From contig NIVC01000714.1 in assembly GCA_002269645.1 (NCBI GenBank), forward strand, positions 248,001 through 312,000: a DNA stretch of 64,000 bases. The letters run 5' to 3'. This document shows positions 3,995 to 63,011 of this stretch, piece after piece. A program made the translations under genes and the position numbers. Source of the DNA: Macrostomum lignano (taxonomy: Eukaryota). Position 1 is the stretch's first letter, and each line of letters starts with the position of its first letter. A model generated the notes under the pieces. The model did no database searches. It was not told where the DNA came from and saw only the letters and a list, made by a program, of their open reading frames with translations.

Positions 3995-20331
<16,337 letters not shown>

Positions 20332-24550: not shown

Positions 24551-26917
24551 ATGTCATCACTTACTGTACACGTCAAATGGCAGAAGCAGAAGTTCTCCGA
24601 TGTCCCCGTGGACACCAGCCAACCACCAGAGCTGTTCAAAGCCACTCTGTACAGCCTCTCTGGTGTGCCTCCGGACCGGCAGAAGGTGAGGCTTTGACTT
24701 GATGGGTATCCGTTGGGGTGTCTTGAGTCTCCGGAATCGCGGATTGTCCCTTCTCCTAAGACGGTTGTCCACTCTGCTTTGAATTGGGTTGTCCAAAAAT
24801 TCTCCGATGGAATGTGATGTTCACTATGTTCTAAACAATCTAAAACCGAAGTGTCCACAATCCATTTAGGGTGTCCGCAATCCTAATCTAGGATGTCCAC
24901 AATCCTAATCTAGGATGTCCACAATCTAGGGTGTCCGCAATCCTAATCTAGGATGTCCACAATCTAGGGTGTCCGCAATCCTAATCTAGGATGTCCACAA
25001 TCCTAATCTGGGATGTCCGCAATCCTAATCTGGGATGTCCGCAATCCTAATCTAGGGTGTCCACAATCCTAATCTAGGATGTCCGCAATCCTAATCTAGG
25101 ATGTCCACAATCTAGGGTGTCCACAATCCTAATCTAGAATGTCCACAATCCTAATCTAGGATGTCCACAATCTAGGATGTCCACAATCCTAATCTAGGAT
25201 GTCCACAATCTAGGATGTCCACAATCCTGATTTAGGGTGTCCGCAATCCTAATCTGGGATGTCCACAATCCTAATCTAGGGTGTCCACAATCCTAATCTA
25301 GGGTGTCCACAATCTTAATCTAGGGTGTCCACAATCCTAATCTAGGGTGTCCAAAATCCTAATCTGGGATGTCCACAATCCTAATCTGGATGACTCAAAC
25401 TCAGACTCTACCTCTAACTCCAGGTAATGGTGAAGGGCGCTGTGCTGCCAGACGACAGCTGGTCGGGCATCGCCCTGAAGCCCGGCGCCACGGTTATGCT
25501 GCTTGGGTCGGCCGAGGCTCTGCCGGAGGCTCCGGCCACGCCGCCTGTAAAATTTGTTGAAGACATGGACGAAAGCGAACTGGCCAAGGCGATGGACTTG
25601 CCGCCGGGTTTGAACAATTTGGGCAATACCTGCTATATGAATGCCACATTGCAGTGCCTGCGCAGCGTGCCAGAGCTCAGGTCCATACTGTCCAAGAATC
25701 GGCTGGCTGGCCTGGGCGGTGCGGCAGCTTCAGGCGGAGGTCCCGAGGTGCTGGTATCGGCCATGTCTAATCTGTTTGCCGCGCTGGACAAATCCGGCAA
25801 CGCCGTGTCGCCGCACGTATTTTTGCACCTGATGCACGCCGCGTTTCCGCAGTTTGCTACCAAAGCTGAAGGCGGTGTGTTTCAGCAGCAGGATGCCAAC
25901 GAGTGCTGGGTGGAGCTGGTGCGCTGTCTGCAGAGCCGGCTGCCCGTGAGTTATGAACTAGGCCATTTAGGGCTTGTGTGCGCGAACATTGCCGTTGGAT
26001 GTTGTGTGAGATTCACAGCCATGAGAGCCAACCTTGCAGGGCACAGAGAGCGTATGTACACGCCTACAAGTCGGGGCGCTGTACACCCTGTATGAGCGTG
26101 TATGAGTTCGTGAACCTTTATGGGGGTCAGAGGGAGGGGGGCAAACCTTGATAGGGTGTCAGGGAGGGGGGTAAACCTTGATAGGGTGTCAGGGAGGGGG
26201 GGGGGGTAAACCTTGATAGGGTGTCAGGGAGGGGGGGTAAACCTTGATAGGGTGTCAGGGAGGGGGGGTAAACCTTGATCGGGTGTCAGAGGGCACAACC
26301 GGAAGTGAGGTTAATTATCCACATTTTAGTGGCAGATTAGTAGTTTAACAAGACCCCAACTTCCTAACCTGGCCAAGACAACCGAGGCCGGCGGTCCAAC
26401 GGACGTCTCCTTCACTGACCGCTACCTGACCGGCTCCATGACCTGCCGGCTGACCTGCCAGGAGTGCGGCCCCGAAGCCGAGCCGGAGGTCAATTTGGTT
26501 GAGACGTTCAGCCAGTTGAGCTGCTTCATCGACAAGGACGTCAAGTACTTGCACACGGGGCTGACTAACGCTATGAAGAGCTCGCTGACTAAGCGCTGCG
26601 ACCGGCTTGGCAGGGACGCCGTGTACTCTAAGCAGAGCAAGATTACCCGCCTGCCGGCCTATCTGACTGTGCAGTTTGTCCGCTTCTACTATAAGGAGAA
26701 GGAGCAGGTCAACGCCAAGGTGCTCAAGGATGTGAAATTCTCCCTGACGCTTGACATCTATCAGCTGTGCTCCGAGGAGCTGCAGGCCCGGCTGAAGCCT
26801 GTGCGGGAGCAGGTGAGGCTGACTGGCGGATAGGCGGGCAAACAGCAGACACTAAGACTCTAGATAGAAACTAAGACAGACAGACAGACAGACACTAAGA
26901 CACTAAGACAGACAGAC

Positions 26918-26954
<37 letters not shown>

Positions 26955-26981
26955 GGCAGAGAGACAGGCAGGCAGGCAGGC

Positions 26982-27046
<65 letters not shown>

Positions 27047-28088
27047 CAGTGAGTGACGCCCCCCCCGAAACCCTCACAGCTCCGCCGCATGGACGAATGG
27101 CTCGCCCTGCAGTCCGGAGCCGCCAAGCGACGTCCCGGCGGTCCGGCCGTGGCCCAAGGCGCGGAGCAGGCCACCACCGCCGACACGGGCACCAACAACG
27201 CTTCGTGGCCTCCGTCGCTGCCGCCGGTGGACCCGGGAGCGCCGCCGCCGCCGGCCTACTATTTCGGGGACGATCCGGGCTCCAACGCTAGCGGACAGTA
27301 CATGCTGCAGGCGGTGCTCACGCATCAGGTGCGCTTCGCTGGCTTTTCATGTATAATCAGCTGGCTTTTCTTAGCTTAGGACTAGCCTAATTCCATTTAT
27401 TAGCCAACCTAAACCCACTCCGTAGCCAACCTAATCCTTCATCTTAGAGTAGACAACCCAATTCTTCTTAGGGTAGACAATCTAATCCTTTATCTTAGGG
27501 TAGACAATTTAAATCCTCCATCTTTGGGTGGACAATCTAAATCATCCATTTTAGGGTAGACAATCTAAATCCTCCATCTTTGGGTGGACAACCAAATCCT
27601 CCATCTGAGGGTAGACAACCTAATCCTCCATCTGAGGGTAGACAACCTAATCCTCCATCTGAGGGTAGACAACCTCATCCTTCATCTTAGGGTAGACAAC
27701 CTAATCCTCCATCTGAGGGTAGACAACCTAATCCCCATCTTAGGGTAGACAACTTAATCCTCCATCTCAGGGTAGACAATCTAAATCCTCGCATTTCCAA
27801 TCCATCCCTCAGGGCCGGTCGAGCTCCTCCGGTCACTACTTGGCCTGGGTGCGCAAAGCGGACCAGCCCGCCAACGCCAATCCCGAGGAGGATGTCTGGT
27901 TCAAATTCGACGACGACTACGTCTCCCCAGTCACTGGGGCCGACATCCTGCGCCTGAGTGGCGGCGGCGACTGGCACTGCGCCTATCTGCTGTTGTACGG
28001 ACCGCGGCAGCTTGACCGGGACTATTCCAGCCTGCCGCCTCCCACCGATGCCTCTGCTAGCCAGGGTGGCGCGGCCGGCACCAATTGA
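24551..28088 (+). CDS. USP14: Ubiquitin carboxyl-terminal hydrolase 14 (USP14/Ubp6); exons 24551-24685, 25424-25945, 26336 (or 26330)-26812, 27080-27328, 27813-28088; ~552 aa
   Basis: N-terminal UBL (MSSLTVHVKWQKQKF..GVPPDRQK|VMVKG), Cys box GLNNLGNTCYMNATLQCL, QQQDANECW, LSCFIDKDVKYL, LPAYLTVQFVRF, His box LQAVLTHQ|GRSSSSGHY and LRLSGGGDWHCAYLLLYGPR. All four introns are GT-AG, phase 0. Confidence 0.96.
24855..25390. repeat. 22-bp minisatellite (CAATCCTAATCTAGGGTGTCCA) in USP14 intron 1
   Basis: Tandem units with interspersed 15-bp deletion variants. Confidence 0.95.
26125..26290. repeat. ~31-bp minisatellite in USP14 intron 2
   Basis: Unit GGTGTCAGGGAGGGGGGTAAACCTTGATAG, about 5 copies. 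Confidence 0.9.
26870..27050. repeat. (GACA)n microsatellite in USP14 intron 3
   Basis: Tandem GACA/CAGA. Confidence 0.95.
27405..27790. repeat. 27-bp minisatellite (GGGTAGACAACCTAATCCTCCATCTGA) in USP14 intron 4
   Basis: About 13 tandem units. Confidence 0.9.
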
Positions 28089-30318: not shown

Positions 30319-30368
30319 CAAATGAGCCGTTCATTCGCTGTCAACCGCATTGCAGCTCTCAGCCAGCC

Positions 30369-30674
30369 ATGGCGCAAAAGCCGGAGCCGTTCTACAACTT
30401 CAGCCGCCAGCCGCAGCCCTATTACGATATTAAGCTGCCTCAGCCGAAGGCGGTCTCACCTTTGATCCGAGCCGCCCGCTGGGGCTTTTTATTGACCGGC
30501 ATAATTTACGGCTACACCAGGTTCAATTATCTGGTGCGCAAGGAGGAGCGCGAGTGGCCGCAGACCCGGGCCATTCTGGAGCGGCGTAAGCACGAGTACG
30601 AGGCCAGTCAGAAGATGCGCGGCGAAGTTGAGATGCTCGAACTGGCTAAGGAGGCCGGCGTGAAGCCCAAGTGA
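30369..30674 (+). CDS. ATP5ME: Mitochondrial ATP synthase subunit e (ATP5I/ATP5ME), intronless CDS, 101 aa
   Basis: LPQPKAVSPLIRAARWGFLLTGIIYGYTRFNYL matches the subunit-e signature (VSPLI.. GxxxG TM, RYNYL), followed by a charged coiled coil ending LAKEAG. Confidence 0.9.
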   Translation: MAQKPEPFYNFSRQPQPYYDIKLPQPKAVSPLIRAARWGFLLTGIIYGYTRFNYLVRKEEREWPQTRAILERRKHEYEASQKMRGEVEMLELAKEAGVKPK

Positions 30675-31949: not shown

Positions 31950-32735
31950 TACTCAGCCAACAGTCTGCCACCCCTCCCGCAGTCTAATGGTAAGCAGAAT
32001 TCGCAGCAGCTCAGTCGCCAACGCGTCGCCACCGCCGCTGCCGCCACCCAGACTGACGTAGGCACTGTTGACGACCTTCGGCACCTTGAAGAGCTTGCGG
32101 AGCTGCGGCTTCGCCTGTCAGTGGCCACCGATCAGCTGATCCGCCTGCGCTCCGCCTACTGCGCCTTCCCCGGCAGGGAGGACGCTCTCGATCGGTGGTC
32201 GCGCAGCGTCTTTCTCGGCATCTTCCACGACGATGACGAGGACTTGTCTTCATCGTCTGACACTGACTCTGACGGCAGTGGTGCCGAAAGCGGCGGCAGC
32301 AGTTCGGCAGACGCCGACGGCGAGCTGTTCAAGCCGAGGCGCCTTCGACGAGTTTCAGTCTCGTCGGCGTCTCGATCTCGGTCTAGGACCAACTCGTCGA
32401 CTTATTTGGCTACAAATATCAGAACAAAGACCAGTCATAGGAGTAGCAGTCTTTGCAACAGACGCCAAAACTCTTTAGCGTCGTTAAAAACGAAATTAAC
32501 CGCGCCGCTGGTATGGATTTTATCGGCATTGGTGCTTTGGCCCGCTGGGGTAGCTTGGCGACGTTGTCGACGATTAACAGCGGCGGCGACAGCGACAAGG
32601 ATAAGGAGGCCGAACGCTCTGATTGGCTGGCGGCCCCGGCCTCGCTGCTGCCTGCTGGCCTTGCTGATTGGCTACGCCGTCTGCCTGCACCTCGTGTTGG
32701 CCCACTGTCTACTGGGCTTCCTGGCCGATTATTAA
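31950..32735 (+). CDS. Orphan ORF, 261 codons with no in-frame Met: short coiled coil, acidic/Ser-rich linker, C-terminal hydrophobic segment(s)
   Basis: Open frame from the acceptor CCCTCATTCTAG|TAC to TAA at 32735, with GC-rich coding-like codons. Contains LRHLEELAELRLRLSVATDQLIRL, DDDEDLSSSSDTDSD and a terminal CCLLALLIGYAVCLHLVLAHCLLGFLADY. The 5' end is uncertain. Confidence 0.65.
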   Translation, partial: YSANSLPPLPQSNGKQNSQQLSRQRVATAAAATQTDVGTVDDLRHLEELAELRLRLSVATDQLIRLRSAYCAFPGREDALDRWSRSVFLGIFHDDDEDLSSSSDTDSDGSGAESGGSSSADADGELFKPRRLRRVSVSSASRSRSRTNSSTYLATNIRTKTSHRSSSLCNRRQNSLASLKTKLTAPLVWILSALVLWPAGVAWRRCRRLTAAATATRIRRPNALIGWRPRPRCCLLALLIGYAVCLHLVLAHCLLGFLADY

Positions 32736-34444: not shown

Positions 34445-35083
34445 TCAGGTATTCATGTACTTCGCGGCACAGTTGACCGTCACATTGACGAAGCTCTTGA
34501 CGTAGACTCGATTCTCGCCGCCATTTTTCGGGCTGCATCTCTGCTGTAGCTTGTACACCTGACGGAAGTAGACTATGTCAACGCATTTTACTGGCTGTTG
34601 CCGACCGTTGCTCTTGTACACGATTGCTTCAGACTGAATGCATTCGGCGTGCACTATTAGCATTGGCACGGTGTCCGGGTAGTGCATCACCCTGTAGCGC
34701 ACTGGACACACCCGACTGCTCAGATCTCTCAGCGGCTTCATTACCGGCATTGCTTCCGGGTACTGATCGTCGGTTTCCGATGTCTTTGCAAGCTCTTGCA
34801 TCTGTTCAGCCAGGCTGTTCCACTCTTGAATTCTTAGCTCCTTCGGTAGATAAGTGTCGGCTGTGGAGTTCACGATCTCCTCGATAAGGCAGTCGGTATT
34901 GGAAATCTTTGTAAAACAGTTGCTTACGATTGACCTTGAATTGTCATCTCGACAAGTGACATCTGCGCTGCTGTTCAGTCGAATAAACGTTCGAGGCTTA
35001 GAGCTGCCATCGGCGAGCACCGAGTAGACTGTTATTGCTGCTAAAAGCGAGCAGCAGATCGCGGCCTTCCTCGTGGGCATCAT
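34445..35083 (-). CDS. Secreted cystine-knot-type protein, IL-17/PTTH/Trunk-like, intronless, 212 aa
   Basis: N-terminal signal peptide (AAICCSLLAAITVYSVLA|D) and N-glycosylation sequons. The C-terminal domain RVCPVRY..P..VP..IVHAEC..CVDIVYFRQVYKL..C..YVKSFVNVTVNC follows the invertebrate IL-17-like pattern (RxxCP.Y, P..L..A.C, C..V.Y...V, V.VxC). Confidence 0.75.
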   Translation of the reverse strand: MMPTRKAAICCSLLAAITVYSVLADGSSKPRTFIRLNSSADVTCRDDNSRSIVSNCFTKISNTDCLIEEIVNSTADTYLPKELRIQEWNSLAEQMQELAKTSETDDQYPEAMPVMKPLRDLSSRVCPVRYRVMHYPDTVPMLIVHAECIQSEAIVYKSNGRQQPVKCVDIVYFRQVYKLQQRCSPKNGGENRVYVKSFVNVTVNCAAKYMNT

Positions 35084-47111: not shown

Positions 47112-48151
47112 TTGACAGATTTTTTAAGATTTCAAGGCTTATGGGGGTCATCGCTCAGATTTCAAGGGGGGGGGTTGATATGTTAAGACTTGTGGGGGGA
47201 GGAATTGCTGAGATGTCAACGCTTACAAGCGATTGCTGAGGTTATTGCAAAGAGACACTACAATCTACATGTAGTTTATTAAAAAAACTCGTACTGCATT
47301 TTTTGGCTCCCCAAGGGGGGGGGCGCTGATTGCTAGTTAAATTCTGAAAATATGAACCACGAAAAGACAGGAGCAGTTGAAACTGAAAAATAACAAAACT
47401 TAGTTCGTATCATATCGGCCATCGGGTGTTTCATAGTCTAAATCTGGGATAAAAGTAATCAAACTGGTTTTAAATAAACATTCATCTGCTTCTCATTTTC
47501 TATTAATGTTGCTATGGTGACCAAAGTATCCAGGTATCCAGGCGATATCCAAGTGCAGGTTTGTGGTGCCCCTATGACATCGCAGCGGCCAGGCCATAGG
47601 CGTTGTACATCCTGGGCTCCAGGTCCGGCTGGACAAAGAATGCCGGCAGCCGAGTGGCCAGGCGGCAATCTCGCCCTCTGCACTCCGGCAACGGCAGAGC
47701 GCGCTAGAAGCCCTCGTAGCGATCGGGCAGAATCTGGATGAGAGTGCAAAATGTGTTTTTGACTGGTTGGTTTCGTTGCTTCGATACATGTCGGCTGTTT
47801 TGTGATATTAATTTACAGTTTCTAAGGTTGTAACTTGTTTCATCAATGATTTAACGGCCCAGCCTTGCTTGCGTCAAAAACTGTAGAATTTTAGCAAAGT
47901 AAATCAGTATGTCGATTACTAGCCACGGTAAATTCTAGTACCTAGGAAGAAGTACCTAGGTATCCAGGTAATAAAAGTTCCTAGGGAGCGCTGGGAGGAG
48001 TGGCGCTCCCACCAGACCCCTAAATCCGCGCCCCTGGCTACAGCTGTTGCGAAATATTTTAAAAGTGTCATTTTTAGTCAGTTCAGTATACTTCAGTATT
48101 TCTGTTTTACTGAACTTTTATACTTCGCAATTCAATTTACGAGGGGTGTTA

Positions 48152-50100: not shown

Positions 50101-52344
50101 AGGTGCTCTGCGCGTTCTCTCTCTAGCTTCGATCGATAAATTCCAAGCTTAGGCAGCACTCTGGTTGGCTGATTCAACCTCCCCCACCCTCACGGCCCCA
50201 CCTACCCCCCCCCAGGCCCAAAACTCCAGTTAGGAAAAGGACACAAAAACCTTCCTTCCCTTGCGTTGTTTGTTCGTCTGCTCTGCTGTTCCACTTAGCT
50301 CCCGCATTTTAACCTAGGCCTCCGGTATGTATTAGCCAAAGGATTCCAAATCCCGCGTCTGATTCCTTTTCTTTCCTAAGAGTGTTCTCTATCCCCTCTC
50401 TCATGTTGGAAAAGCCAGTGAACCAACGTAAGTTGTGTCATCGAAGTCATATTTAACTAACAACTCCACGTTACACCCTTGCCTTACACTACGGCTTGTA
50501 CTTTGCCGGTTGTCATTTTGATTTGAATACTCTACTAGCAAACAAAGAAGCTAGTCTTAATTATAAAAACTTTTTTAGAAAAAATGACTCCAAACCAATT
50601 GACGTCTTATCTGACAGTACTGGAAAGCTAATTGGCTTAGCAAATCTAGCTATTTAAAGCAAACGCCCTCGCTCTAATACTGTCAGGTAATGATGTCTAT
50701 TGAAGGAGTATTCGCCAAGTGTTTGCCAATTGTTACCATTCTGTCCATCTTGCAGTTTGTAAATGCTACCATGGACAACTCTAGTTGTCCATGAATGCTA
50801 TCGCATTCAAGTCGCCAGCTAGTTGGCCAAGCCTAAGCCTAAGATATGCACGTTTACCCAGCCACTGTTTATATTTCGCCATAATAGGAACTAAATTTTT
50901 GTCAAATAAATCCATATAAAAATGACGGCATTGGGCGTTAGACTTAACATGATTTACCGTGTTTTGGAATTTTGTGCAGACTGCGGACTCGTGTTATTTG
51001 TTGCTCACTGCAAAAGCAAAATATCTCTTTTAAACTACAATCTGCAACTGCTTTGCTATAACAAGTATCAACGTCGTAGTTAATTTTAGCGATCAAGTTT
51101 TCTCCAATTCTAATTTCTAATATGATATGGCCATACCATCATAGGTGAGCACAAAATCAAGCTGAAACTTGGAATTAACTACAATTACAATGCGCCATAT
51201 CAGTGCCCAATAATTTGCCGATAATTAAACAATTAAACTAATTTTACAGATAAGAAAATATAAAGATAATGGAAAGAGTAAGACGAAGGAATGAATAAAC
51301 AGGAACAGATTACAGAGAATAAGAAATAAAAAATCATGGGTAATTAATTTATCATGTCAGAAAAGTAGTAAAATATGTTTGTATGCTAATACTAAGTAAT
51401 ACATCACATCAATACCGCAGCGATAGCTAAGATCTTCCGCCTTGCTGTCTGGGACTCGGAGAGCTACTACTACTACACTACTGTTCTTCGCACACTTCTG
51501 TGGTGATTTTTGCTCCCGTCCCGACTCCCAATCCCAACTCGGCAGTGTATATTTATGCAGTCAAAGTGAGTTACGAGCGTATTTCCGATATGCCCGCTAC
51601 GTGTATGCGTTATACTAACACTATTTTTATAATACATGTATGGGTGTAGATGCGCATAAAGAAAGTAGACTATAATATAATAAGTACATATATCAATTCT
51701 ATCCGAGTCTGTTTGCCTGAGAATTATTAAGCAATACAATTTCGATGGTAGCACACCTTTAAAATGTACTTGAAGGTGTTTTTTTATGCTGAGAATATGC
51801 TAATGCTGATATAATGGATAGGCTGCACAGAGTTAAAACGAGCTAAAACGTCTAGGCGCCGAAGCGTTGTATATGGTTTGTTTCTGCCTCTGCGTGTACC
51901 TGTACGTTAGTATTGATGTATTGGTGTTGCAGTTAGCGCGCCAAGTGAGGATTTACCACAGACAGTCTCTCTCAAGGCGTGCGCCACACAGTCACACACT
52001 GTGACACTGGCTTTGCTCTGAACCAAAAGGTTTATTGGCCATAGACGTTTTCAGCGGGGGCTGTCGTGCGCTTCAACCTCTTTCTAACACGCGTACAAGT
52101 ATGTACATGTAAGTGAAACGATTCTTAGTCCTCCTACAACAATGAAATTGCCATAGACGTTGCTCCTCTGGAAAAGGATTGGACTGGGAAATAGAAATAA
52201 ATAAGCGAGAAAAACATGTACGCTTCTGCTTACTGCCCAAGTTAAATGACTACATGTACATATAAATCAGGGGTCGCGGCAATCGACTGCCCGCGAAGCC
52301 TCTCTAACCGGCCCTCGGCTCCTTTGTGAAACTTTGCAATAGCA

Positions 52345-56836: not shown

Positions 56837-57054
56837 AGTCTTCACCAGGGCCAGGCTCACTCACCTCGGGCCAAACCCGGTTCTCTCCGACGTTTGCAGG
56901 CCCGAGAGTATCCCACCGCTCGCCCGGTACCTCAGGGACACGGGACGAGCTGATTTCTTCCCTTGAGCGACATCACTTCGATGGAAGTCTTTGGTCGCCA
57001 GGGGCTAAAGGAATGGGCGGTCGGACGATGCCCCCTGCAGCTAAGTCAAGTCAG

Positions 57055-57250
57055 ATGAAATGGCTCCTACTCAGATATATGAAATGCCGCCTACCTACTC
57101 AGTTATGAAATGCCGTCTACTCAGTTATGAGATGCCGCCTACTCAGTTATGAGATGCCGCCTACTCAGATAAAATGGTGCCTGCTCAGATATGAAATGGC
57201 GCCTACTCGAATATGGAATGGCGCCTACTTAGTTATGAAATGGCGCCTAC
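57055..57250. repeat. ~22-bp minisatellite (ATGAAATGGCGCCTACTCAGTT)
   Basis: About 9 diverged units. Confidence 0.85.
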
Positions 57251-57738
57251 CAACGAAAGGACGCCCCTCAAAGTTTTGTCCTCTGAAATGAGAGTGTTTT
57301 CCATTCCGGACTCTACTCTATCTAGAAGTCCCTGCCGAGAGGGTCGAGGAGAGGGTTGACGTCCATTCCCTCACTCTACCCCTTCGCGTTTATTCTTCTG
57401 CCGTATCTTTCTCCCTCTCTCTCTCTCTCTCTCTCTCCCTGCGCCGAATAAGTTATTGATTTCACTTTGCGCAGATATTGAGGCCCCGCTGCACCTCCTC
57501 CAGTTCTAGGCAGGCATTGGGCGAGAGATCAACTGGCATTAATCTGCGCGGCCAGGGTTCATAAGTAAGAAAAACTCGTTGCAACGAGAGGCGTGCCTTC
57601 GAACTATTTTATTTATTATCTCTACTTTCTGCTAAAATACAACCTCGATTGTTCCACGGCATCATCAGTGACAGCTGAAAGTTCCAGTTTTGGTTATATA
57701 TCTGCGACACTCGTCCTCACGAATTACTTTTTGAGACT

Positions 57739-59732
57739 ATGTCTGGAGAAGGCGGTAAGTTACAGCAGTTACAGCTGATGGAGCTAGGGTAGCCCCAAGC
57801 ATATCGAAAAATCCCGAATGGTCACCAGATCCCGAATGGCGCCCTCACCAGATCCCGAATGGCGCCCACACCAGATTCCGAATACTGCCCTCAGCAGATC
57901 CCGAATAACGCCCTCACCAGATCCCGAATGGCGCCCACACCAGATTCCGAATACTGCCCTCAGCAGATCCCGAATGGCGCCCTCAGCAGATCCCGAATTG
58001 CGACCTCACCAGATCCCGAATGGCGCCCTCACCAGATCCCGAATGGCGCCCTCACAAATCCCAAATGGCGACCTCACCAGATTCCGATTGGTGCCCTCAC
58101 CAGATCCCGAATGGCGCCCTCAGCAAATCCCAAATGGCGACCTCACCAGATCCCGAATGGCGCCCTCACCAGATCCCGAATGGCGCTCTCACCTAATCCT
58201 GAATGGCACCCTCAGCAGAATTCGAACGGCGCCCCTCCCAAACAGACCCAAACGACGCCTCTACCGAAACAGACCTGATCCTAAAAATGGTAACTACTCA
58301 GCCCCTTTTCCATTCAAAATGGTGCCAGCATAGCAAAACCTAGGCCGATCCGTCGTAGCACCCCCCCCTCCCCCACCAGAACCCAGTTGTAGCACCCACT
58401 GGTAAAATTATCTTTATCCTTAGATTATACCGTACATTTAATGGAAATTATTTTACGCATTTGCATCTGAAAATTTACTTCGAAGTATTAGCTGTTGCAA
58501 AGCGACAACGCCCCTATTTTGGCATTTCAGAAGAGGCCCCAGCGGCAGAGGTTAGTTCGATCAACATTATTTTTAGTTCGCATGGTAAAGGCAGAACGTA
58601 ACCCCACACAGTGCTTCTTGCCAGCCGTAAACGACCGCGGCATTGGGGCATTGTATATTAATAAGAAAACTTTACTGCTAATTTAGGGTCGTCCTAAGCA
58701 TCGGCTTAATCAAACAATTTGCGCTATAGGGAACATTTGCGAGAGAAAGACGCTTGCTCGCAGACCCCAACCCTTACCCTACAATCTCGCCATTTCTGAT
58801 CAACCGCCCACGGCCTGGCTGCTGCTGCGTAGTTGATGCGCCCATGTAATTGGTACCGTTCAGACTAAAGTAAATAAGAGAAATTATTTATGACTAACCA
58901 TATGCTGAACTGCTTCCTGCAAAGCTTGTAAATCTTATTACACAGGGTTCTTTGTACTGACCTGATTTGGACTCGCTATACACAATGCATCTGACTCGTA
59001 AAACTTTCAGACCACGACTACAACTGAGGAGACGAAGACAGTCGAAGAGACAACTACAGAGGTTTGGTCCTTTCTTGGCTCTGTGTTTCAGTTGGACTGC
59101 ATGATTGATACTTATTGCAACTGTTGTATCTCACGCCTGTCCCATCTCATTCCCTTTCTAGCCAATCATGGGCTAGCCTAGCCTAGCGTATGTACACTTC
59201 CTGTCCCATCTATCCTCCGTCAACAGCCTCACTCTATCGCTCTCATCTCTGATTGGCTATCGCAGCGTCCAGTGAAGTTTGACATTTAGCTCAGAGATCG
59301 AAATAAGTGGATTGGATTCAAATCGCGCACAGTACGCTTGACTGAAAAAGAGAGGGGCTGGCTGGTTTTCTATGTCTCTCTTGCTTTCTCTCTCTGTCCT
59401 CCGCCTGCCTCCCAATCATTTCCTATGTACACTCAGTCAGTCAGTCAGTCAGTTGTGTCTAAATGTCTATTTTCTCTTTCCCACCAGTAGCCACGAATAA
59501 CAACCTTATTCCTCCGCCTCCCTTTCAATCCGATTGGCTATCGAATCGATTGACAAAGAAGGTCAAATCAACGCTCTCGTCTCAGTTAATGTTATCAACA
59601 TAAGATTTTCTTCTTTTCCAGGAAGCAAAAGCCGGCGATGCCTCTAATGGCGACTCCAAGGCTAAAGAGGGCGACGTGAACAAGAACGTGAAAGACCAAC
59701 AGCCTGGCAATGTCTGCTGCAACATTGTGTGA
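57739..59732 (+). CDS. Micro-exon gene for a 65-aa acidic peptide with a C-terminal CCaaX lipidation motif; exons 57739-57754, 58531-58550, 59011-59061, 59622-59732
   Basis: ATG TCT GGA GAA GGC G|GTAAGT; TTTCAG|20 nt|GTTAGT; TTTCAG|51 nt|GTTTGG; TTCTTTTCCAG|111 nt to TGA. Phases 1,0,0 join without stops to MSGEGEEAPAAETTTTTEETKTVEETTTEEAKAGDASNGDSKAKEGDVNKNVKDQQPGNVCCNIV*. AATAAA at 59736 and ~59753. Confidence 0.72.
57822..58250. repeat. 23-bp minisatellite (CAGATCCCGAATGGCGCCCTCAC) in intron 1 of the CaaX gene
   Basis: About 18 units, related to the 57055-57250 unit. Confidence 0.9.
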
Positions 59733-60408
59733 CACAATAAATTGCTTTGTTTAATAAACGAATACTACGGTAAACAGTCAATTATGGGCAAATCTTGATA
59801 ATGAGTACTTCTGTAAATCTTAGTGTTATGTGCTCATCAACAGCTAACCCCTCCAACTGACGCTGTGATGGGCATGCGAAACTTTTAGATCATGTGTAAC
59901 AGCGTGAGTTGGGAGAGGATTTCAGCTGTTGCTGAGTACTCGTATGCTCCAATGGACGAAATTGTTTATTTTCGTAATTCAAAAAACGTTTGAAGGAATT
60001 TAAATTAAATATTGCTATCACTATATAAAGCTTTTTGCTCAGAAACTAAACATCTTTAAGTTATACTACGTAGCTTTTTCTCAAAAATCGGGTCCTGGAA
60101 TTCCTTGTTTCGATTAAACAAACTTTAAATAATAAACATCGATAAAAGACTGTCGTTATCTCCTTATACCTTTTATGTGGTGAAGGATCTAATAAAAATA
60201 TCTGTGCATCGTTTTTATTTGCTAATTGACCGAGAAATTGTTTAAATTCAACAATAGTCAACGTACATATACATTGCAACTGCATATCCGGTATACAAAG
60301 CAGCACGATCTGTAAACTCACTCGTATGTTTATCCAGGTGCTTTATCTGAAGCTTTCGAACAACCTAAATAATTTGTACGTACATGTCCTGCCCATCACT
60401 TGAAATCT

Positions 60409-60690
60409 AGGCCGCAGCCCAGAGGTCCAGCGCGGCGCTCTGATGTGCCAGCGGCCCAGGCTCGATTCCCAGTGCAGTCACATTATTTGGGGCTAAATTG
60501 TAATCTCGGCTTAAGCTCTTCTCGTGCAATTAACACCTTTAAGGGCCAACCCCCAGGGCACAATGAAGTGTACATCCCTAACGATAAAGTCGGGGCCGCT
60601 CCGGGTAGTTGTGTGACTCGGCGGAATTGGCAGTAATGCCTCTCGCCGGTGTGACAATGCCGCCCAAAGTTATCTGGGAAGCTTGTCCAA
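60409..60690 (+). mobile_element. tRNA-derived SINE-like element
   Basis: Box A-like GCAGCCCAGAGG and box B-like GGCTCGATTCC at tRNA spacing. It cannot fold as an intact tRNA, and the 3' boundary is uncertain. Confidence 0.5.
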
Positions 60691-60850
60691 CAACTGAGGA
60701 TCTTGGGGCTGGCTCAGCAACTGACACTCTGGGAGGCTGTCCCAGCAATCGAGGATCTGGGAGGCTTGCCAAGCAAATGAGGATCTGGGAGGCTGGCCCA
60801 GCAGCTGAGGATCTAGGAGGCTTGCCAAGCAAATGAGGATCTGGGAGGCT
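60690..60850. repeat. Short inverted copy of the 28-bp Syk-intron minisatellite
   Basis: CAGCAACTGAGGATCTGGGAGGCTGGCC is the reverse complement of the 5915-7515 unit. Confidence 0.85.
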
Positions 60851-60931: not shown

Positions 60932-63011
60932 CTACATCGCTAGGAATCTGGGCACATGCGTTTTCGACGGCGACGTGAACGACTCCTCAGGTGGCTGACG
61001 CTGCGGCGGTGGCTGCGACTCCAGCCAGTTTCGAGATTGCGCTGCCTGATGCGCCTCGTCTAAGCCACTGTGATTCAGAGGCCACCGACCAAATAATGCC
61101 TCGCTGGCTGAAGCTCTGAAAGGTGGAGCGAAGCAACGATGCGTCTAAGTGAACTTAGTGAACCAACCAACCAACCAACCAACCAACCAACCAACCAACC
61201 AACCAACCAACCAACCAACCAACCAACCAACCAACCAACCAACCAACCAACCAACCAACCAACCAACCAACCAACAAACCAACCAACCAACCAACCAACC
61301 AACCAACCAACCAACCAACCAACCAACCAACCAACCAACCAACCAACCAACCAACCAACCAACCAACCAACCAACCAACCAACCAACCAACCAACCAACC
61401 AACCAACCAACCAACCAACCAACCAACCAACCAACCAACCAGCCGAAAATCGAAGAAATTAATTAACTAACCTTGCCGAAGCGTGCTGTTGCTCTATCAC
61501 TACTGTCAGCATCCGAGGATGCCGATAGCTCGCTGACTCTCCCAGCTCCGTCTCCGATGGCACCGCTCGAAGTCGACGCCTTGATCTGCTGATCAGAGAC
61601 TCAGCGGGGTCCAGGCAGCACTGGACGATCTTGTTGTTGAGTCCGCTGACAACCACGATATCCGCATCGTCTGCGGAAGTGCCGTGCCAAGTGCAGCCGC
61701 TGTGAAGCGATGCCTCCGATGTAGTGAACCGTCCGGAAAGGTGGCGGGCTCGAGCTGGCATCACCCAGTCAGTCATGGGCAGCAGCTCGGCGCTCAGGCT
61801 GGTGAGGGTCTCCATGCTGGGCAGCGTGAGCAGGTCTCGGGAGCCGCCCAGTCCGTCGCCACCGCTGGGAGACACCTGCGGGATCAGAGAATAGTGGACA
61901 GCTTTTTATTATCCGAACCTCAATATTGAAATCCCAAAATCTGTTTCAGAATTTAGGAGCTTCAGAATCGGAAATCTTAAAATTAATAATATTAATAATA
62001 ATAATTGATTACAACTGCCCTACTGGTCAGATGTGCAACCGACAGCTAAGCCGCAGCTATTGCGCGGCGCATCTGAAGGCTGCGTACAAGGACTGGGGGG
62101 GGGAGGTCGCCACACACAGCCTCAATTACCCCAGCTAATGCTGGCACCCATTTTACAGCTGGGTGAACTGAAGCGATGCAGAGTTAAGTGTCTGTCTTGC
62201 TCAAGGACACAAATTTTTCCGAGCGGGTCGAGAATCGAACCCACGATTTTTCAGTCGTAGGTCCGATGCTCTAACTCAAGGGTTAGAACCTAGCTAATGG
62301 CCACGGGCCAGGGAGAGAGAGAAGGAAAGGGAATAGAGTAGAGAAGAGAAAACAGATGAGAGAAGAGAGGAAAGTCGAGAGAGGAGATGAGAAAAGATGA
62401 GAGGAGATGAGAGATGAGATATGAGATATGGGATGAGAGAAGATAAGAAAATAGATAAAGATGAGAGATGAAAGGAGAGAAGAGAAGAAAGAGAAGATAA
62501 GATGAGAGAGGAGAGGAGAGAAGAGGGGCGAGGTAATAGAGAGAAGAGGAGAGACAGGTGGTAAGAGAGCTGAGAAGAGACGCAAACCTTGAGCGGGCCT
62601 AACCACTAGGCTACAACCCCATTGAAATTAGGTCAGAATAGGAAGCTCAGAAAGCTCAGAGTCTCAAAGCGTCACCTGAATGGCCACAGTCCGCCTGTCA
62701 AGAGCCAGCCTAATAAACGGCTGCATCGCTCGTTTCAAGTTGCGCCTCCTCTGCCGTTCCTCTTCCACGCGTACAGTCGGAGTGCTGCGCAGAAAGGCGC
62801 TCACCTCCCGGTCCAGCTCCCGCTTCCCAGCTCGCCGGTTGATGTGCGACACAATCATGAACAGGATGGCCATGGCGTATACCGTCACCACCGTCACAAC
62901 GTACCACATGGCGCCGTTGTGATCGTAGGGAGTCTCAGCTGGAGCCGTAGTCACCGGCGGGGCACCAGTGCCATTCGACAGCAGTCCCAGCAAGTGAGTT
63001 CGGCGACCCAT
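60932..63011 (-). CDS. Single-pass membrane protein with a KCNE-like TM region; exons 63011-62676, 61875-61472, 61115-60932; 307 aa
   Basis: No signal peptide; an NGT sequon; one TM ([24 protein letters not shown]) followed by the basic [13 protein letters not shown] and a Ser/Pro-rich tail. Splice sites CAG|GTGACG..CCCGCAG|GTG (phase 0) and AG|GTTAGT..CACCTTTCAG|A (phase 2) give a 924-nt open frame. Confidence 0.75.
61160..61441. repeat. (ACCA)n microsatellite in intron 2 of the minus-strand membrane protein gene
   Basis: About 70 units. Confidence 0.98.
61985..62620 (-). mobile_element. tRNA-derived SINE interrupted by an insertion at 62275-62598
   Basis: Removing the insert restores GGGGTTGTAGCCTAGTGGTTAGAGCATCGGAC..GTGGGTTCGATTC (boxes A and B). 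This is followed by the body GTGTCCTTGAGCAAGAC..CACTTAAC..CACCCAGCTGTAAAATGGGTGCC and an (ATT)n tail at ~61985-62005. Confidence 0.8.
62275..62598 (-). mobile_element. CT/GA-microsatellite non-autonomous element inserted in the SINE head
   Basis: Flanked by CTAA (62271-74) and CTAA (62599-602). It has the inverted 7-mers CTCAAGG (62275-81) and CCTTGAG (62587-93) and a ~270-bp GA-rich core. Confidence 0.7.

What the first reader, a model, noticed from the sequence alone, without database searches (positions are those of the whole stretch)
57739..59758. Micro-exon gene encoding a 65-aa acidic, disordered peptide with a dual-lipidation CCaaX tail
Seen: coding exons of 16, 20, 51 and 111 nt with good splice signals and matching phases, a terminal CCNIV* and two AATAAA right after the stop. 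It is absent from the ORF track. Known: a CaaX with an adjacent Cys is prenylated and palmitoylated, as in Ras isoforms and paralemmin, and small acidic membrane-anchored proteins (GAP43/BASP1/paralemmin class) shape neuronal membranes. Inferred: an apparently uncharacterised lipid-anchored microprotein. The phase-0 51-nt Thr/Glu exon could be skipped in frame, and further micro-exons may exist (e.g. CAG|ACTAAA|GTAAAT at 58864-69).
Basis: partly seen in the sequence, partly recalled or inferred. Interest (0 to 1): 0.75.

Follow-up and report, generated by a model that had tools for sequence, protein, structure and literature searches.

The report
Candidate lipid-anchored microprotein gene, flatworm
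A stretch of Macrostomum lignano (flatworm) DNA probably holds a tiny, unannotated 3-4 exon gene for a 48-65 residue acidic peptide. Its tail (Cys-Cys-Asn-Ile-Val) fits the rules for lipid attachment, but no transcript, relative or experiment confirms it yet.

Summary
The described sequence is all there: four exons of 16, 20, 51 and 111 nt with GT/AG borders and matching phases, a 65-aa ORF ending CCNIV*, and two AATAAA signals just after the stop. The window is Macrostomum lignano.

Exons 1, 2 and 4 are well supported:
- Exons 1 and 2 carry the two best donor sites within 3.2 kb.
- Exon 4 has the best acceptor in the whole window.
- Exon 4 shows coding-like codon usage only in the proposed frame.
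- Upstream lie a 451-nt ATG-free stretch and a TATA/Inr-like pair.
- Splice and poly(A) signals alone would arise by chance about 4 times per window. With codon usage added, 0 of 100 simulated sequences matched.

Exon 3 is only the best available in-frame cassette.

No relatives were found in 5.8 and 1.8 billion-protein libraries, and no Pfam family matches. GenBank's M. lignano proteins have nothing here, as expected given an annotation pipeline that dropped transcripts without a predicted ORF.

CNIV fits the canonical geranylgeranylation profile Cx[VIL][LFIMV], and the neighbouring Cys could be palmitoylated. The neuronal GAP43/paralemmin-like role has no support.

A rival product, from the ATG that ends the spliced leader joined in frame to exon 4 or exon 3, would keep the same tail.

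Verdict: a plausible orphan lipid-anchored microprotein, unproven and of modest interest.

The parts
57291..57738 (+). ATG-free leader/promoter-proximal stretch ending at the proposed start codon
   Evidence: No ATG lies between 57288 and 57739. This 451-nt gap ranks 13 of 975 in the window, and most larger gaps lie in tandem repeats. The mean gap is 66 nt.
57695..57701 (+). TATA-like element (TATATAT)
   Evidence: It is the only TATA[AT]A in 57600-57740. It lies 31 nt upstream of the A of an Inr-like TTACTTT. The promoter role is inferred.
57724..57730 (+). Initiator-like TTACTTT (YYANWYY), putative start of transcription at A57726
   Evidence: Read directly from the sequence. The spacing to the TATA is canonical, and the implied 5' UTR is about 13 nt. 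Inferred, not shown.
57739..57754 (+). Exon 1 coding part (ATG + 13 nt; MSGEG + first base of the next codon)
   Evidence: ATG has A at -3. The donor GCG|gtaagt scores 9.6 bits, the best of 135 GT sites in 57000-60200. It fits the M. lignano cis-donor motif GT[G/A]AG (PMC8629364).
57755..58530 (+). Intron 1 (776 nt), holding an 18-copy 23-bp minisatellite at 57822-58234
   Evidence: Tandem Repeats Finder. The long ORFs listed there are repeat artefacts and are not on record as genes.
58531..58550 (+). Exon 2, a 20-nt micro-exon (completes E, then EAPAAE)
   Evidence: The acceptor tttcag| scores 7.1 bits (rank 8 of 177). The donor GAG|gttagt scores 7.5 bits (rank 2 of 135). It is the only route that keeps exon 1 in frame with exon 4: joining exon 1 directly to exon 3 or exon 4 runs into early stops (read from the sequence).
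58551..59010 (+).
   Evidence: ACTAAA ranks second among in-phase cassette candidates, with acceptor 4.7 and donor 4.6 bits. Unsupported otherwise.
59011..59061 (+). Exon 3, a candidate 51-nt phase-0 cassette (TTTTTEETKTVEETTTE)
   Evidence: It is the best of 56 in-phase stop-free candidates. Its signals are weak: acceptor 1.9 bits and donor 3.7 bits (gtttgg, which is not GT[GA]AG). Codon LLR is +4.0, p about 0.06. Ten ACN codons have varied third bases, a pattern found at about 4 non-repeat loci in the window. Genuine sites in the window score as low as -0.1 bits.
59062..59621 (+). Intron 3, with four CCAAT/ATTGG motifs and short repeated modules
   Evidence: the repeat finder families D1, D2, D3 and D6, including GATTGGCTATCG twice. 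Meaning unknown.
59622..59732 (+). Exon 4 coding part: 36 codons plus TGA (EAKAGDASNGDSKAKEGDVNKNVKDQQPGNVCCNIV*)
   Evidence: The acceptor ttttcttcttttccag| scores 14.3 bits, the only acceptor of 13 bits or more in the window on either strand. Codon LLR is +15.0 in frame, against -11 and -21 in the other frames, p about 0.02 against open non-coding stretches. A stop lies 6 codons upstream of the acceptor.
59715..59729 (+). Codons for Cys61-Cys62-Asn-Ile-Val: CaaX box CNIV with an adjacent upstream Cys
   Evidence: Sequence. CNIV fits the Cx[V/I/L][L/F/I/M/V] profile of canonical geranylgeranylated, Rce1-cleavable sequences (PMC11304957). Lipidation itself is inferred.
59736..59758 (+). Two AATAAA poly(A) signals (59736-59741 and 59753-59758), 4 and 21 nt after the stop
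   Evidence: They are the only A[AT]TAAA in 59700-59900.

Best explanation
This is most likely a real, unannotated small protein-coding gene of Macrostomum lignano.

Gene model:
- Transcription probably starts about 13 nt upstream of ATG 57739, downstream of a TATA-like box. The start site is inferred.
- The pre-mRNA is cis-spliced exon 1 to exon 2 to exon 4, and the 51-nt exon 3 is an optional in-frame cassette.
- The mRNA ends a few tens of nt after the stop, at one of two AATAAA signals, so it would be only about 200-260 nt long.

Product:
- A 48-aa peptide, or 65 aa with exon 3.
- It is acidic (pI about 4.2), has no aromatic residues, is very hydrophilic and is almost certainly disordered.
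- It has no signal peptide and ends in Cys61-Cys62-Asn-Ile-Val.

Inferred mechanism (none of these steps is shown):
1. Cys62 is prenylated. X = Val and a2 = Ile point to GGTase-I, though FTase is not excluded.
2. The -NIV tripeptide is removed by an Rce1-type protease.
3. The new C-terminus is methylated.
4. Cys61 is S-palmitoylated, which fixes the acidic chain to the cytoplasmic face of a membrane.

What the tethered acidic chain does there is unknown. A membrane-surface charge or scaffold role, possibly tuned by CK2-type phosphorylation of the Thr/Glu cassette, is the simplest guess.
For: Gene model:
- Every sequence element is at the stated coordinates.
- The exon 1 and exon 2 donors rank 1 and 2 of 135 sites. 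The exon 4 acceptor is the best in the 64-kb window on both strands.
- Exon 2 is required for the frame, and both of its sites are strong.
- Exon 4 codon usage is +15.0 bits in frame against -11 and -21 out of frame, or 0.42 bits per codon. Known exons of the window score 0.19-0.61.
- Exon 4 is among the best-scoring unannotated ORF segments in 35-61 kb.
- None of 100 simulated 128-kb sequences gave a strict-signal chain with this codon score. The only other strict chain in the real window scores -2.5.
- A 451-nt ATG-free stretch ends at the start codon.
- A TATA-like and an Inr-like element sit at canonical spacing.
- Two AATAAA signals lie within 26 nt of the stop.

Why it would be missing from databases:
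- The published M. lignano annotation called ORFs with TransDecoder and removed 'non-coding' transcripts before GenBank submission (PMC5730564).
- Average intron length is 1.1 kb and there are 4.9 introns per gene (same paper), which fits introns here of 460-776 nt.

Lipidation:
- CNIV fits Cx[V/I/L][L/F/I/M/V] (PMC11304957).
- The N-terminus MSGEGEE and only 7 hydrophobic residues in 65 argue for a cytosolic protein.
Against: - There is no transcript, junction, poly(A) or peptide evidence.
- No relative was found in 5.8 billion clustered proteins or in 1.84 billion representatives searched with exon 4. The single hit, P0121, is a bacterial repeat protein matched by composition.
- No Pfam family matches. 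No paralogue exists in the window or in the homeologous locus L001.
- The homeologous copy of this locus could not be reached, so conservation is untested.
- Splice and poly(A) signals alone are expected by chance about 4 times per window.
- The codon-usage p-value against real non-coding open stretches is only about 0.02-0.03.
- The exon 2 donor (gttagt) and exon 3 donor (gtttgg) do not fit GT[G/A]AG.
- A 13-nt 5' UTR and a 20-nt internal exon are unusual.
- CaaX-like ORF ends are common by chance: 15 were found in the window under a loose definition.
Confidence: 0.5

Rival explanations
1. Chance constellation: no gene exists here. The ATG, splice-like sites, open frames, CaaX-like end and AATAAA motifs lie in non-functional, repeat-rich intergenic DNA and were assembled into a model by eye.
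For: - Strict-signal chains with a stop followed by AATAAA arise about 4 times per 128 kb in simulated sequence.
- Thousands arise at the thresholds exon 3 needs.
- CaaX-like ORF ends are frequent.
- No homologue was found anywhere.
- No annotated protein lies in 49.5-64 kb.
- The region is a gene-poor, repeat-rich stretch.
Against: - The codon bias of exon 4 is frame-specific and as strong as in known exons.
- None of 100 simulations combined the signals with that codon score.
- The exon 4 acceptor is the best in the whole window.
- There is a 451-nt ATG-free leader.
- A TATA/Inr-like pair and two poly(A) signals sit exactly where a gene would need them.
Confidence: 0.2
2. The locus is transcribed and spliced but is non-coding. 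It would be a short spliced lncRNA, possibly the downstream part of the primary transcript that carries the mir-8/200 hairpin 7 kb upstream on the same strand. The 65-codon frame is not translated or has no function.
For: - mir-8 lies at 50598-50700 on the + strand.
- 20% of non-trans-spliced M. lignano genes are classed as non-coding (PMC8629364).
- The ORF is very short, has no relatives and is low in complexity.
Against: - Frame-specific codon bias.
- The first ATG after 451 ATG-free nt opens the frame.
- The stop is followed at once by poly(A) signals.
- The locus has its own TATA/Inr-like elements.
- No Rfam family, such as an intronic snoRNA, was found in 57000-60300 even at E up to 1.
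Confidence: 0.12
3. The same C-terminal peptide is made from a trans-spliced mini-gene. The M. lignano spliced leader, which ends in ATG, is joined to the exon 4 acceptor or to the exon 3 acceptor. Both exons start in phase 0, so the leader's ATG opens the frame. The products would be 37 aa (M+EAKAG...CCNIV) or 54 aa. Exons 1 and 2 would then be irrelevant or part of an outron.
For: - The leader is CGGTCTCTTACTGCGAAGACTCAATTTATTGCATG, and the trans-acceptor motif [T/C]TNCAG fits TTCCAG (exon 4) and TTTCAG (exons 2 and 3) (PMC8629364).
- About 30-39% of genes are trans-spliced.
- The exon 4 acceptor is exceptionally strong.
- CCAAT motifs in intron 3 could mark an internal promoter.
Against: - Trans-splicing needs an acceptor with no upstream cis donor. 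Here two very strong donors (exons 1 and 2) lie upstream and are in phase.
- Trans-spliced genes are mostly conserved genes (69.9% have a human homologue), and this one has no relatives.
- Use of the leader's ATG has not been shown for this locus.
Confidence: 0.1
4. Exon 4 is the last coding exon of a larger gene whose other exons lie elsewhere, for example the hypervariable tail of a Rab, Ras or Rho GTPase, Ykt6 or a PRL phosphatase. All of these end in CC-containing prenylation motifs.
For: - CCXXX is also a Rab-type C-terminus (own knowledge).
- Exon 4 has no in-frame ATG of its own.
- Hypervariable tails are hydrophilic and disordered, like this peptide.
Against: - tblastn with RAB11A, HRAS, RHOB, RAP2A, YKT6, PTP4A1 and GNG2 finds no such exon anywhere in the 64-kb window.
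- The upstream + strand genes (USP14, ATP synthase e, the 250-aa gene) end with their own stops.
- No protein in the libraries, including GenBank's M. lignano proteins, carries this 36-residue tail.
Confidence: 0.05

Closest known systems
Proteins with a CaaX box plus an adjacent Cys (prenyl + palmitoyl anchor): paralemmin (CCSIM-type end), RhoB (CCKVL), Ykt6 (CCAIM)
   Same: The C-terminal pentapeptide is Cys-Cys-x-aliphatic-x. Dual lipid anchoring to the cytoplasmic face of membranes is predicted. Like paralemmin, the rest of the chain is hydrophilic and acidic.
   Different: There is no sequence similarity to any of them: no Pfam hit and no GTPase or longin exon in the window. The candidate is only 48-65 aa and has no folded or coiled-coil domain. 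X = Val points to geranylgeranyl rather than the farnesyl of paralemmin and Ykt6. The comparison motifs are quoted from my own knowledge.
Heterotrimeric G-protein gamma subunits (about 65-75 aa CaaX proteins)
   Same: Similar size, a multi-exon small gene, a C-terminal CaaX, and cytosolic synthesis followed by prenylation.
   Different: No GGL-domain match. No helical or coiled-coil character: the peptide is acidic, Thr/Glu/Gly-rich and of low complexity. G-gamma has no second Cys for palmitoylation.
Hydrophilic lipid-anchored disordered proteins: GAP43, BASP1/CAP-23, Leishmania HASPB
   Same: These are small, highly charged, disordered polypeptides held on the inner membrane face only by lipids.
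   Different: They are anchored at the N-terminus (Gly2 myristoylation and/or N-terminal Cys palmitoylation). The candidate begins MSGEGEE and has neither feature. There is no sequence similarity and no evidence for neuronal expression.
Schistosome micro-exon genes (MEGs)
   Same: A flatworm gene whose short CDS is split into very small exons (16, 20 and 51 nt), with one in-frame skippable exon.
   Different: By my own knowledge of the family definition, MEGs consist mainly of symmetric exons of 36 nt or less whose lengths are multiples of 3, and they encode secreted proteins with a signal peptide. Here 16 and 20 nt are not multiples of 3, 51 nt exceeds 36, and there is no signal peptide. A CaaX tail implies a cytosolic protein.
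Fungal a-factor-type lipopeptide pheromone precursors
   Same: Very short, hydrophilic, signal-peptide-less precursors that end in a CaaX box.
   Different: The residues next to the CaaX (KDQQPGNVCC) are hydrophilic, unlike the mature pheromone. No processing sites are recognisable and no animal example is known. This is a speculative analogy only.

Membership tests
CaaX-type prenyltransferase substrates (functional class) | Cys at position -4 from the C-terminus, i.e. the stop codon directly follows C-x-x-x | tested here: met
   TGC AAC ATT GTG TGA at 59718-59732. This holds only if exon 4 is translated in this frame.
CaaX-type prenyltransferase substrates (functional class) | a2 branched aliphatic and X within the set accepted by FTase or GGTase-I | tested here: met
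   a2 = Ile and X = Val. This fits Cx[V/I/L][L/F/I/M/V] and the Caa[L/F/I/M/V] GGTase-I consensus (PMC11304957). The exact tetrapeptide CNIV was not found in the held supplementary tables.
CaaX-type prenyltransferase substrates (functional class) | Cytosolic exposure of the C-terminus (no signal peptide or transmembrane segment) | tested here: met
   The N-terminus is MSGEGEEAPAAE. GRAVY is -1.08, and only 7 of 65 residues are hydrophobic with no run of them. Judged by inspection; no dedicated predictor was run.
CaaX-type prenyltransferase substrates (functional class) | The protein is made and carries an isoprenoid | not testable with these tools
   Needs RNA/Ribo-seq, mass spectrometry or metabolic labelling.
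Dual-lipid (prenyl + palmitoyl) CCaaX anchors | A Cys directly upstream of the CaaX Cys | tested here: met
   TGC TGC at 59715-59720.
Dual-lipid (prenyl + palmitoyl) CCaaX anchors | S-palmitoylation of the upstream Cys | not testable with these tools
   Needs acyl-exchange or click chemistry, or a C61S localisation test.
Paralemmin family (Pfam Paralemmin) | Sequence match to the family profile | tested here: not met
   No Pfam family matches at E up to 10. No homologue was found.
G-protein gamma subunit (GGL domain) | Sequence match to the GGL profile or to a G-gamma sequence | tested here: not met
   No Pfam hit. tblastn with GNG2 finds nothing at the locus.
Rab-type CCXXX double geranylgeranylation | A Rab GTPase domain upstream of the CC motif (needed for REP/RabGGTase recognition; own knowledge) | tested here: not met
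   No small-GTPase exon lies in the 64-kb window. The ORF has no room for one.
Schistosome-type micro-exon genes (MEGs) | The bulk of the CDS consists of symmetric micro-exons of 36 nt or less with lengths that are multiples of 3 (definition from own knowledge) | tested here: not met
   Internal exons are 20 nt and 51 nt, and the first coding exon is 16 nt.
Schistosome-type micro-exon genes (MEGs) | N-terminal signal peptide (secreted product) | tested here: not met
   The MSGEGEE... N-terminus is acidic and not hydrophobic.
GAP43 / BASP1 class | N-terminal acylation motif (Met-Gly for myristate, or N-terminal Cys pair) | tested here: not met
   Residue 2 is Ser, and the only Cys residues are 61 and 62.

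The most novel reading that the evidence does not exclude
The locus encodes a lineage-restricted precursor that consists of little more than a disordered acidic chain and a CCaaX tail, and that is not just a passive anchor. One reading is a precursor of a prenylated peptide released or exported without a signal peptide, an animal counterpart of fungal a-factor-type lipopeptide signals. The other is a minimal, alternatively spliced 'charge brush' whose Thr/Glu cassette is switched in and out to tune membrane surface properties. Nothing in the evidence excludes either reading, and nothing specifically supports them.
Probability: 0.04. Interest if true: 0.8.

Novelty: new member of a known kind. 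Interest (0 to 1): 0.33.

Why it matters
If real, this would be an orphan microprotein made of an acidic disordered chain and a prenyl/palmitoyl anchor. It would have been missed by the M. lignano annotation, which relied on TransDecoder ORF calls and dropped transcripts without a predicted ORF from the GenBank submission.

It would show that such pipelines discard short lipid-anchored proteins. It would also give M. lignano, a transgenic regeneration model, a native C-terminal membrane tag to compare with the heterologous HRas and KRas tags already tested there (PMC12633465).

The biological pay-off is otherwise modest. CaaX anchoring is well understood, nothing ties the gene to a process or cell type, and it may be restricted to one genus.

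Tried and rejected
1. Homology. The 65-aa peptide was searched against 5.8 billion clustered proteins with no hit at E up to 10. Exon 4 was searched against 1.84 billion representatives and gave only a spurious bacterial repeat protein. Pfam gave nothing.

2. Reaching the homeologous M. lignano copy for an exon-versus-intron conservation test.
- USP14 led to NIVC01002256.1 (L001), which is colinear with window 17.2-34.5 kb. Non-coding sequence is 90-98% identical there, and the ATP-synthase-e ORF is 100% identical.
- The candidate lies about 23 kb beyond the reachable flank.
- A concatenated query of all 38 non-repetitive ORFs of 62 aa or more from 49.5-64 kb found no annotated neighbour to step from.
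- Exact look-ups of the IL-17-like ORF and of the two minisatellite ORFs in intron 1 were not on record.

4. The idea of a larger-gene tail was rejected. No Rab, Ras, Rho, Rap, Ykt6, PRL or G-gamma exon lies in the window.

5. The idea of a snoRNA or ncRNA host gene was rejected. An Rfam E-value scan of 57000-60300 was empty.

6. No SL RNA gene is in the window, and there are no tRNAs.

7. No repeat or transposon is shared between the locus and the rest of the window or L001, apart from (TC)n.

8. The exact tetrapeptide CNIV was looked for in the yeast FTase and GGTase-I CXXX screen supplements and not found in the held text.

9. Structure prediction was not attempted. The spliced sequence is not accepted, and the peptide is of low complexity.
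Full report
**Organism and setting.** The window is eukaryotic and repeat-rich. A USP14 exon (25427-25945) is 98% identical to Macrostomum lignano BOX15_Mlig029734g1. That protein's contig is NIVC01002256.1 of assembly GCA_002269645.1, fetched as L001. L001 is colinear with window 17.2-34.5 kb: non-coding DNA is 90-98% identical and the ATP-synthase-e ORF is 100% identical. So the window is M. lignano, a hidden polyploid (PMC10468722), and L001 is a homeologous or allelic copy. Other genes in the window are:
- a Syk-like SH2-SH2-kinase gene (3995-20331, +);
- USP14 (24551-28082, +);
- ATP synthase e (30357-30674, +);
- a 250-aa gene (about 31956-32735, +);
- an IL-17-like ORF (34445-35083, -; Pfam IL17 5e-8);
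- a mir-8/200 hairpin (50598-50700, +).

The finding lies in a gene-poor, minisatellite-rich stretch between 35 and 61 kb.

**Observation.** All elements are present at the stated coordinates:
- exon 1, 57739-57754 (ATG...GCG|gtaagt);
- exon 2, 58531-58550 (tttcag|AAG...GAG|gttagt);
- exon 3, 59011-59061 (tttcag|ACC...GAG|gtttgg);
- exon 4, 59622-59732 (ttttccag|GAA...TGC TGC AAC ATT GTG TGA);
- AATAAA at 59736 and 59753.

The spliced frame gives MSGEGEEAPAAETTTTTEETKTVEETTTEEAKAGDASNGDSKAKEGDVNKNVKDQQPGNVCCNIV.

**Is it more than chance?** I scored all GT and AG sites in 57000-60200 with a generic metazoan splice PWM.
- The exon 1 and exon 2 donors rank 1 and 2 of 135.
- The exon 4 acceptor ranks 1 of 177. 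At 14.3 bits it is the only acceptor of 13 bits or more in the whole window on either strand.
- The exon 2 acceptor ranks 8.
- Exon 3 ranks 12 (donor) and 55 (acceptor).

Enumerating every chain of ATG exon, internal exons and stop exon with AATAAA at the exon 1/2/4 signal strength finds two chains in the 128 kb of both strands. One of them is exon 1-exon 2-exon 4. Markov-simulated sequence gives about 4 such chains per 128 kb, so the signals alone prove nothing. At the thresholds exon 3 needs, thousands of chains exist.

Three independent features change the picture:
1. *Codon usage.* A table trained on 1434 codons of known exons in this window gives exon 4 +15.0 bits in the proposed frame, against -11 and -21 in the other two. 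That is 0.42 bits per codon; the training exons score 0.19-0.61. About 2% of open non-coding stretches of the same length score as high. None of 100 simulated 128-kb sequences had a strict chain with the codon score of exon 1-2-4, and the other real chain scores -2.5.
2. *ATG-free leader.* The start codon is the first ATG after a 451-nt ATG-free stretch. This gap ranks 13 of 975, and almost all larger gaps are tandem repeats.
3. *Core promoter elements.* The only TATA-like element within 140 nt (TATATAT, 57695) lies 31 nt upstream of the A of an Inr-like TTACTTT, 13 nt before the ATG.

Exon 2 is required for the frame, because joining exon 1 directly to exon 3 or exon 4 hits early stops.

Its codon score is +4.0 (p about 0.06). 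It has ten ACN codons with varied third bases, a period-3 pattern found at about four non-repeat loci in the window. Genuine M. lignano sites in the window score as low as -0.1 bits, so exon 3 is possible but unproven. The exon 1 donor fits the published cis-donor motif GT[G/A]AG, while the exon 2 and exon 3 donors do not. All three acceptors fit (T/C)TNCAG (PMC8629364).

**Why it is absent from databases.** The 65-aa peptide has no relative at E up to 10 in 5.8 billion clustered proteins. Exon 4 has none in 1.84 billion representatives: the single hit is a bacterial repeat protein matched in six stretches by composition. Pfam is empty. The M. lignano annotation estimated coding potential with TransDecoder and removed non-coding transcripts before GenBank submission (PMC5730564). 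A 65-codon ORF would therefore not appear even if its transcript had been assembled. No other Macrostomum data seem to be in the libraries: the next-best USP14 hit is only 56% identical. Absence of relatives is thus weak evidence.

I could not reach the homeologous copy of the locus, which would have been the best test available. No annotated neighbour exists within 10 kb, and exact look-ups failed. A degenerate pattern for the C-terminus found nothing in metagenome contigs.

**What the product would be.** The peptide is 48 aa (exons 1-2-4) or 65 aa (with exon 3), with pI about 4.2-4.3. The 65-aa form has 15 D/E against 6 K/R. Both forms lack aromatic residues and have GRAVY near -1. The exon 3 cassette adds several S/T-x-x-D/E sites. 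There is no signal peptide or hydrophobic segment, so the C-terminus would be exposed to cytosolic enzymes.

The last four residues, CNIV, fit the profile Cx[V/I/L][L/F/I/M/V], which describes canonical geranylgeranylated sequences with an Rce1-compatible a2 residue. Val is among the X residues accepted by GGTase-I (PMC11304957). The adjacent Cys61 gives the arrangement seen in paralemmin, RhoB and Ykt6 (own knowledge), where prenylation is followed by palmitoylation. All lipidation steps are inferred.

**Rivals.**
- *(a) Chance* (0.2). See the chance analysis above.
- *(b) A spliced non-coding RNA*, perhaps linked to the mir-8 primary transcript 7 kb upstream (0.12). The frame-specific codon bias and the ATG-free leader argue against it.
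- *(c) A trans-spliced mini-gene* (0.1). The M. lignano spliced leader ends in ATG and is thought to supply a start codon in this genus. Exons 3 and 4 both begin in phase 0, so the leader joined to exon 4 would give a 37-aa product, and joined to exon 3 a 54-aa product, each with the same tail. Two strong in-phase cis donors upstream argue against it.
- *(d) The tail of a larger prenylated protein* (0.05). No GTPase, Ykt6, PRL or G-gamma exon lies in the window, and no database protein carries the tail.

**Comparison with known families.** The candidate works like a CCaaX dual-lipid anchor attached to a disordered acidic chain. It is not a member of the paralemmin, G-gamma, Rab, GAP43/BASP1 or schistosome MEG families, because each fails a defining feature (see the membership table).

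**Verdict.** The gene model is plausible for exons 1, 2 and 4 and weak for exon 3. The lipid-anchor reading is reasonable but untested, and the functional class is speculative. The decisive tests are simple: public RNA-seq, SL and poly(A) tracks; the homeologue and sister-species alignment; and tagged-tail injections.

No step had to be referred.

Noticed in passing
window 50598-50700 (+): A mir-8/mir-200 family precursor: Rfam 52.3 bits against a gathering score of 47, with hairpin z-score -5.1. The 3' arm carries UAAUACUGUCAGGUAAUGAUGU. It lies 7 kb upstream of the candidate on the same strand, in a stretch with no recognisable protein-coding gene.
   Followed up: partly
window 59130-59550 (+), inside 'intron 3': Four CCAAT/ATTGG motifs sit within about 400 nt, embedded in short repeated modules: GATTGGCTATCG twice, CCTGTCCCATCT twice, and TCCTCCGCCT(G/C)CC twice. 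They could mark an internal promoter or enhancer. Unexplained.
   Followed up: partly
window 61477-61887 (-) and 62664-63011 (-): Two minus-strand ORFs have coding-like codon usage (LLR 43.8 and 54.3). The second encodes a 115-aa protein with an N-glycosylation-type NGT, one transmembrane helix and a basic cytoplasmic tail. Neither has a Pfam match or a database relative. This is probably another unannotated gene, convergent with the candidate.
   Followed up: partly
window 26460-26501 vs P0001 residues 247-260: The GenBank protein of the homeologous USP14 (BOX15_Mlig029734g1, 265 aa) switches into another frame after QECGP and ends early. The window reads on in frame through the conserved USP14 core. 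The cause is either a frameshift in the homeologue or an assembly or annotation error.
   Followed up: no
window 30340-30674 (+): The ATP synthase subunit e gene is 100% identical to the homeologue over 318 nt, while flanking DNA is 90-94% identical. The annotated gene starts directly after a TTGCAG acceptor, as expected for a spliced-leader trans-splice site.
   Followed up: partly
window 34445-35083 (-): A single-exon 212-aa ORF with a signal-peptide-like N-terminus and an IL-17 cystine-knot domain (Pfam PF06083, 5e-8). The exact protein is not on record in the gene-call collection.
   Followed up: partly
window 47460-47810 (both strands): A GC-rich island in an AT-rich region, open in several frames on both strands. 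One minus-strand segment (47578-47703) has the highest codon score of any unannotated segment in 35-61 kb. There is no Pfam hit. Its nature is unknown.
   Followed up: no
window 5900-7500, 19100-19950, 60672-60850: The same 28-bp minisatellite family (units such as ...CCAGATCCTCAGTTGCTGGGCCAGCCTC...) occurs inside the Syk-like kinase gene's long ORFs and again near 60.7 kb. It produces long spurious ORFs of the '[20 protein letters not shown]' type. More generally, minisatellites account for most of the long ORFs in this window.
   Followed up: no
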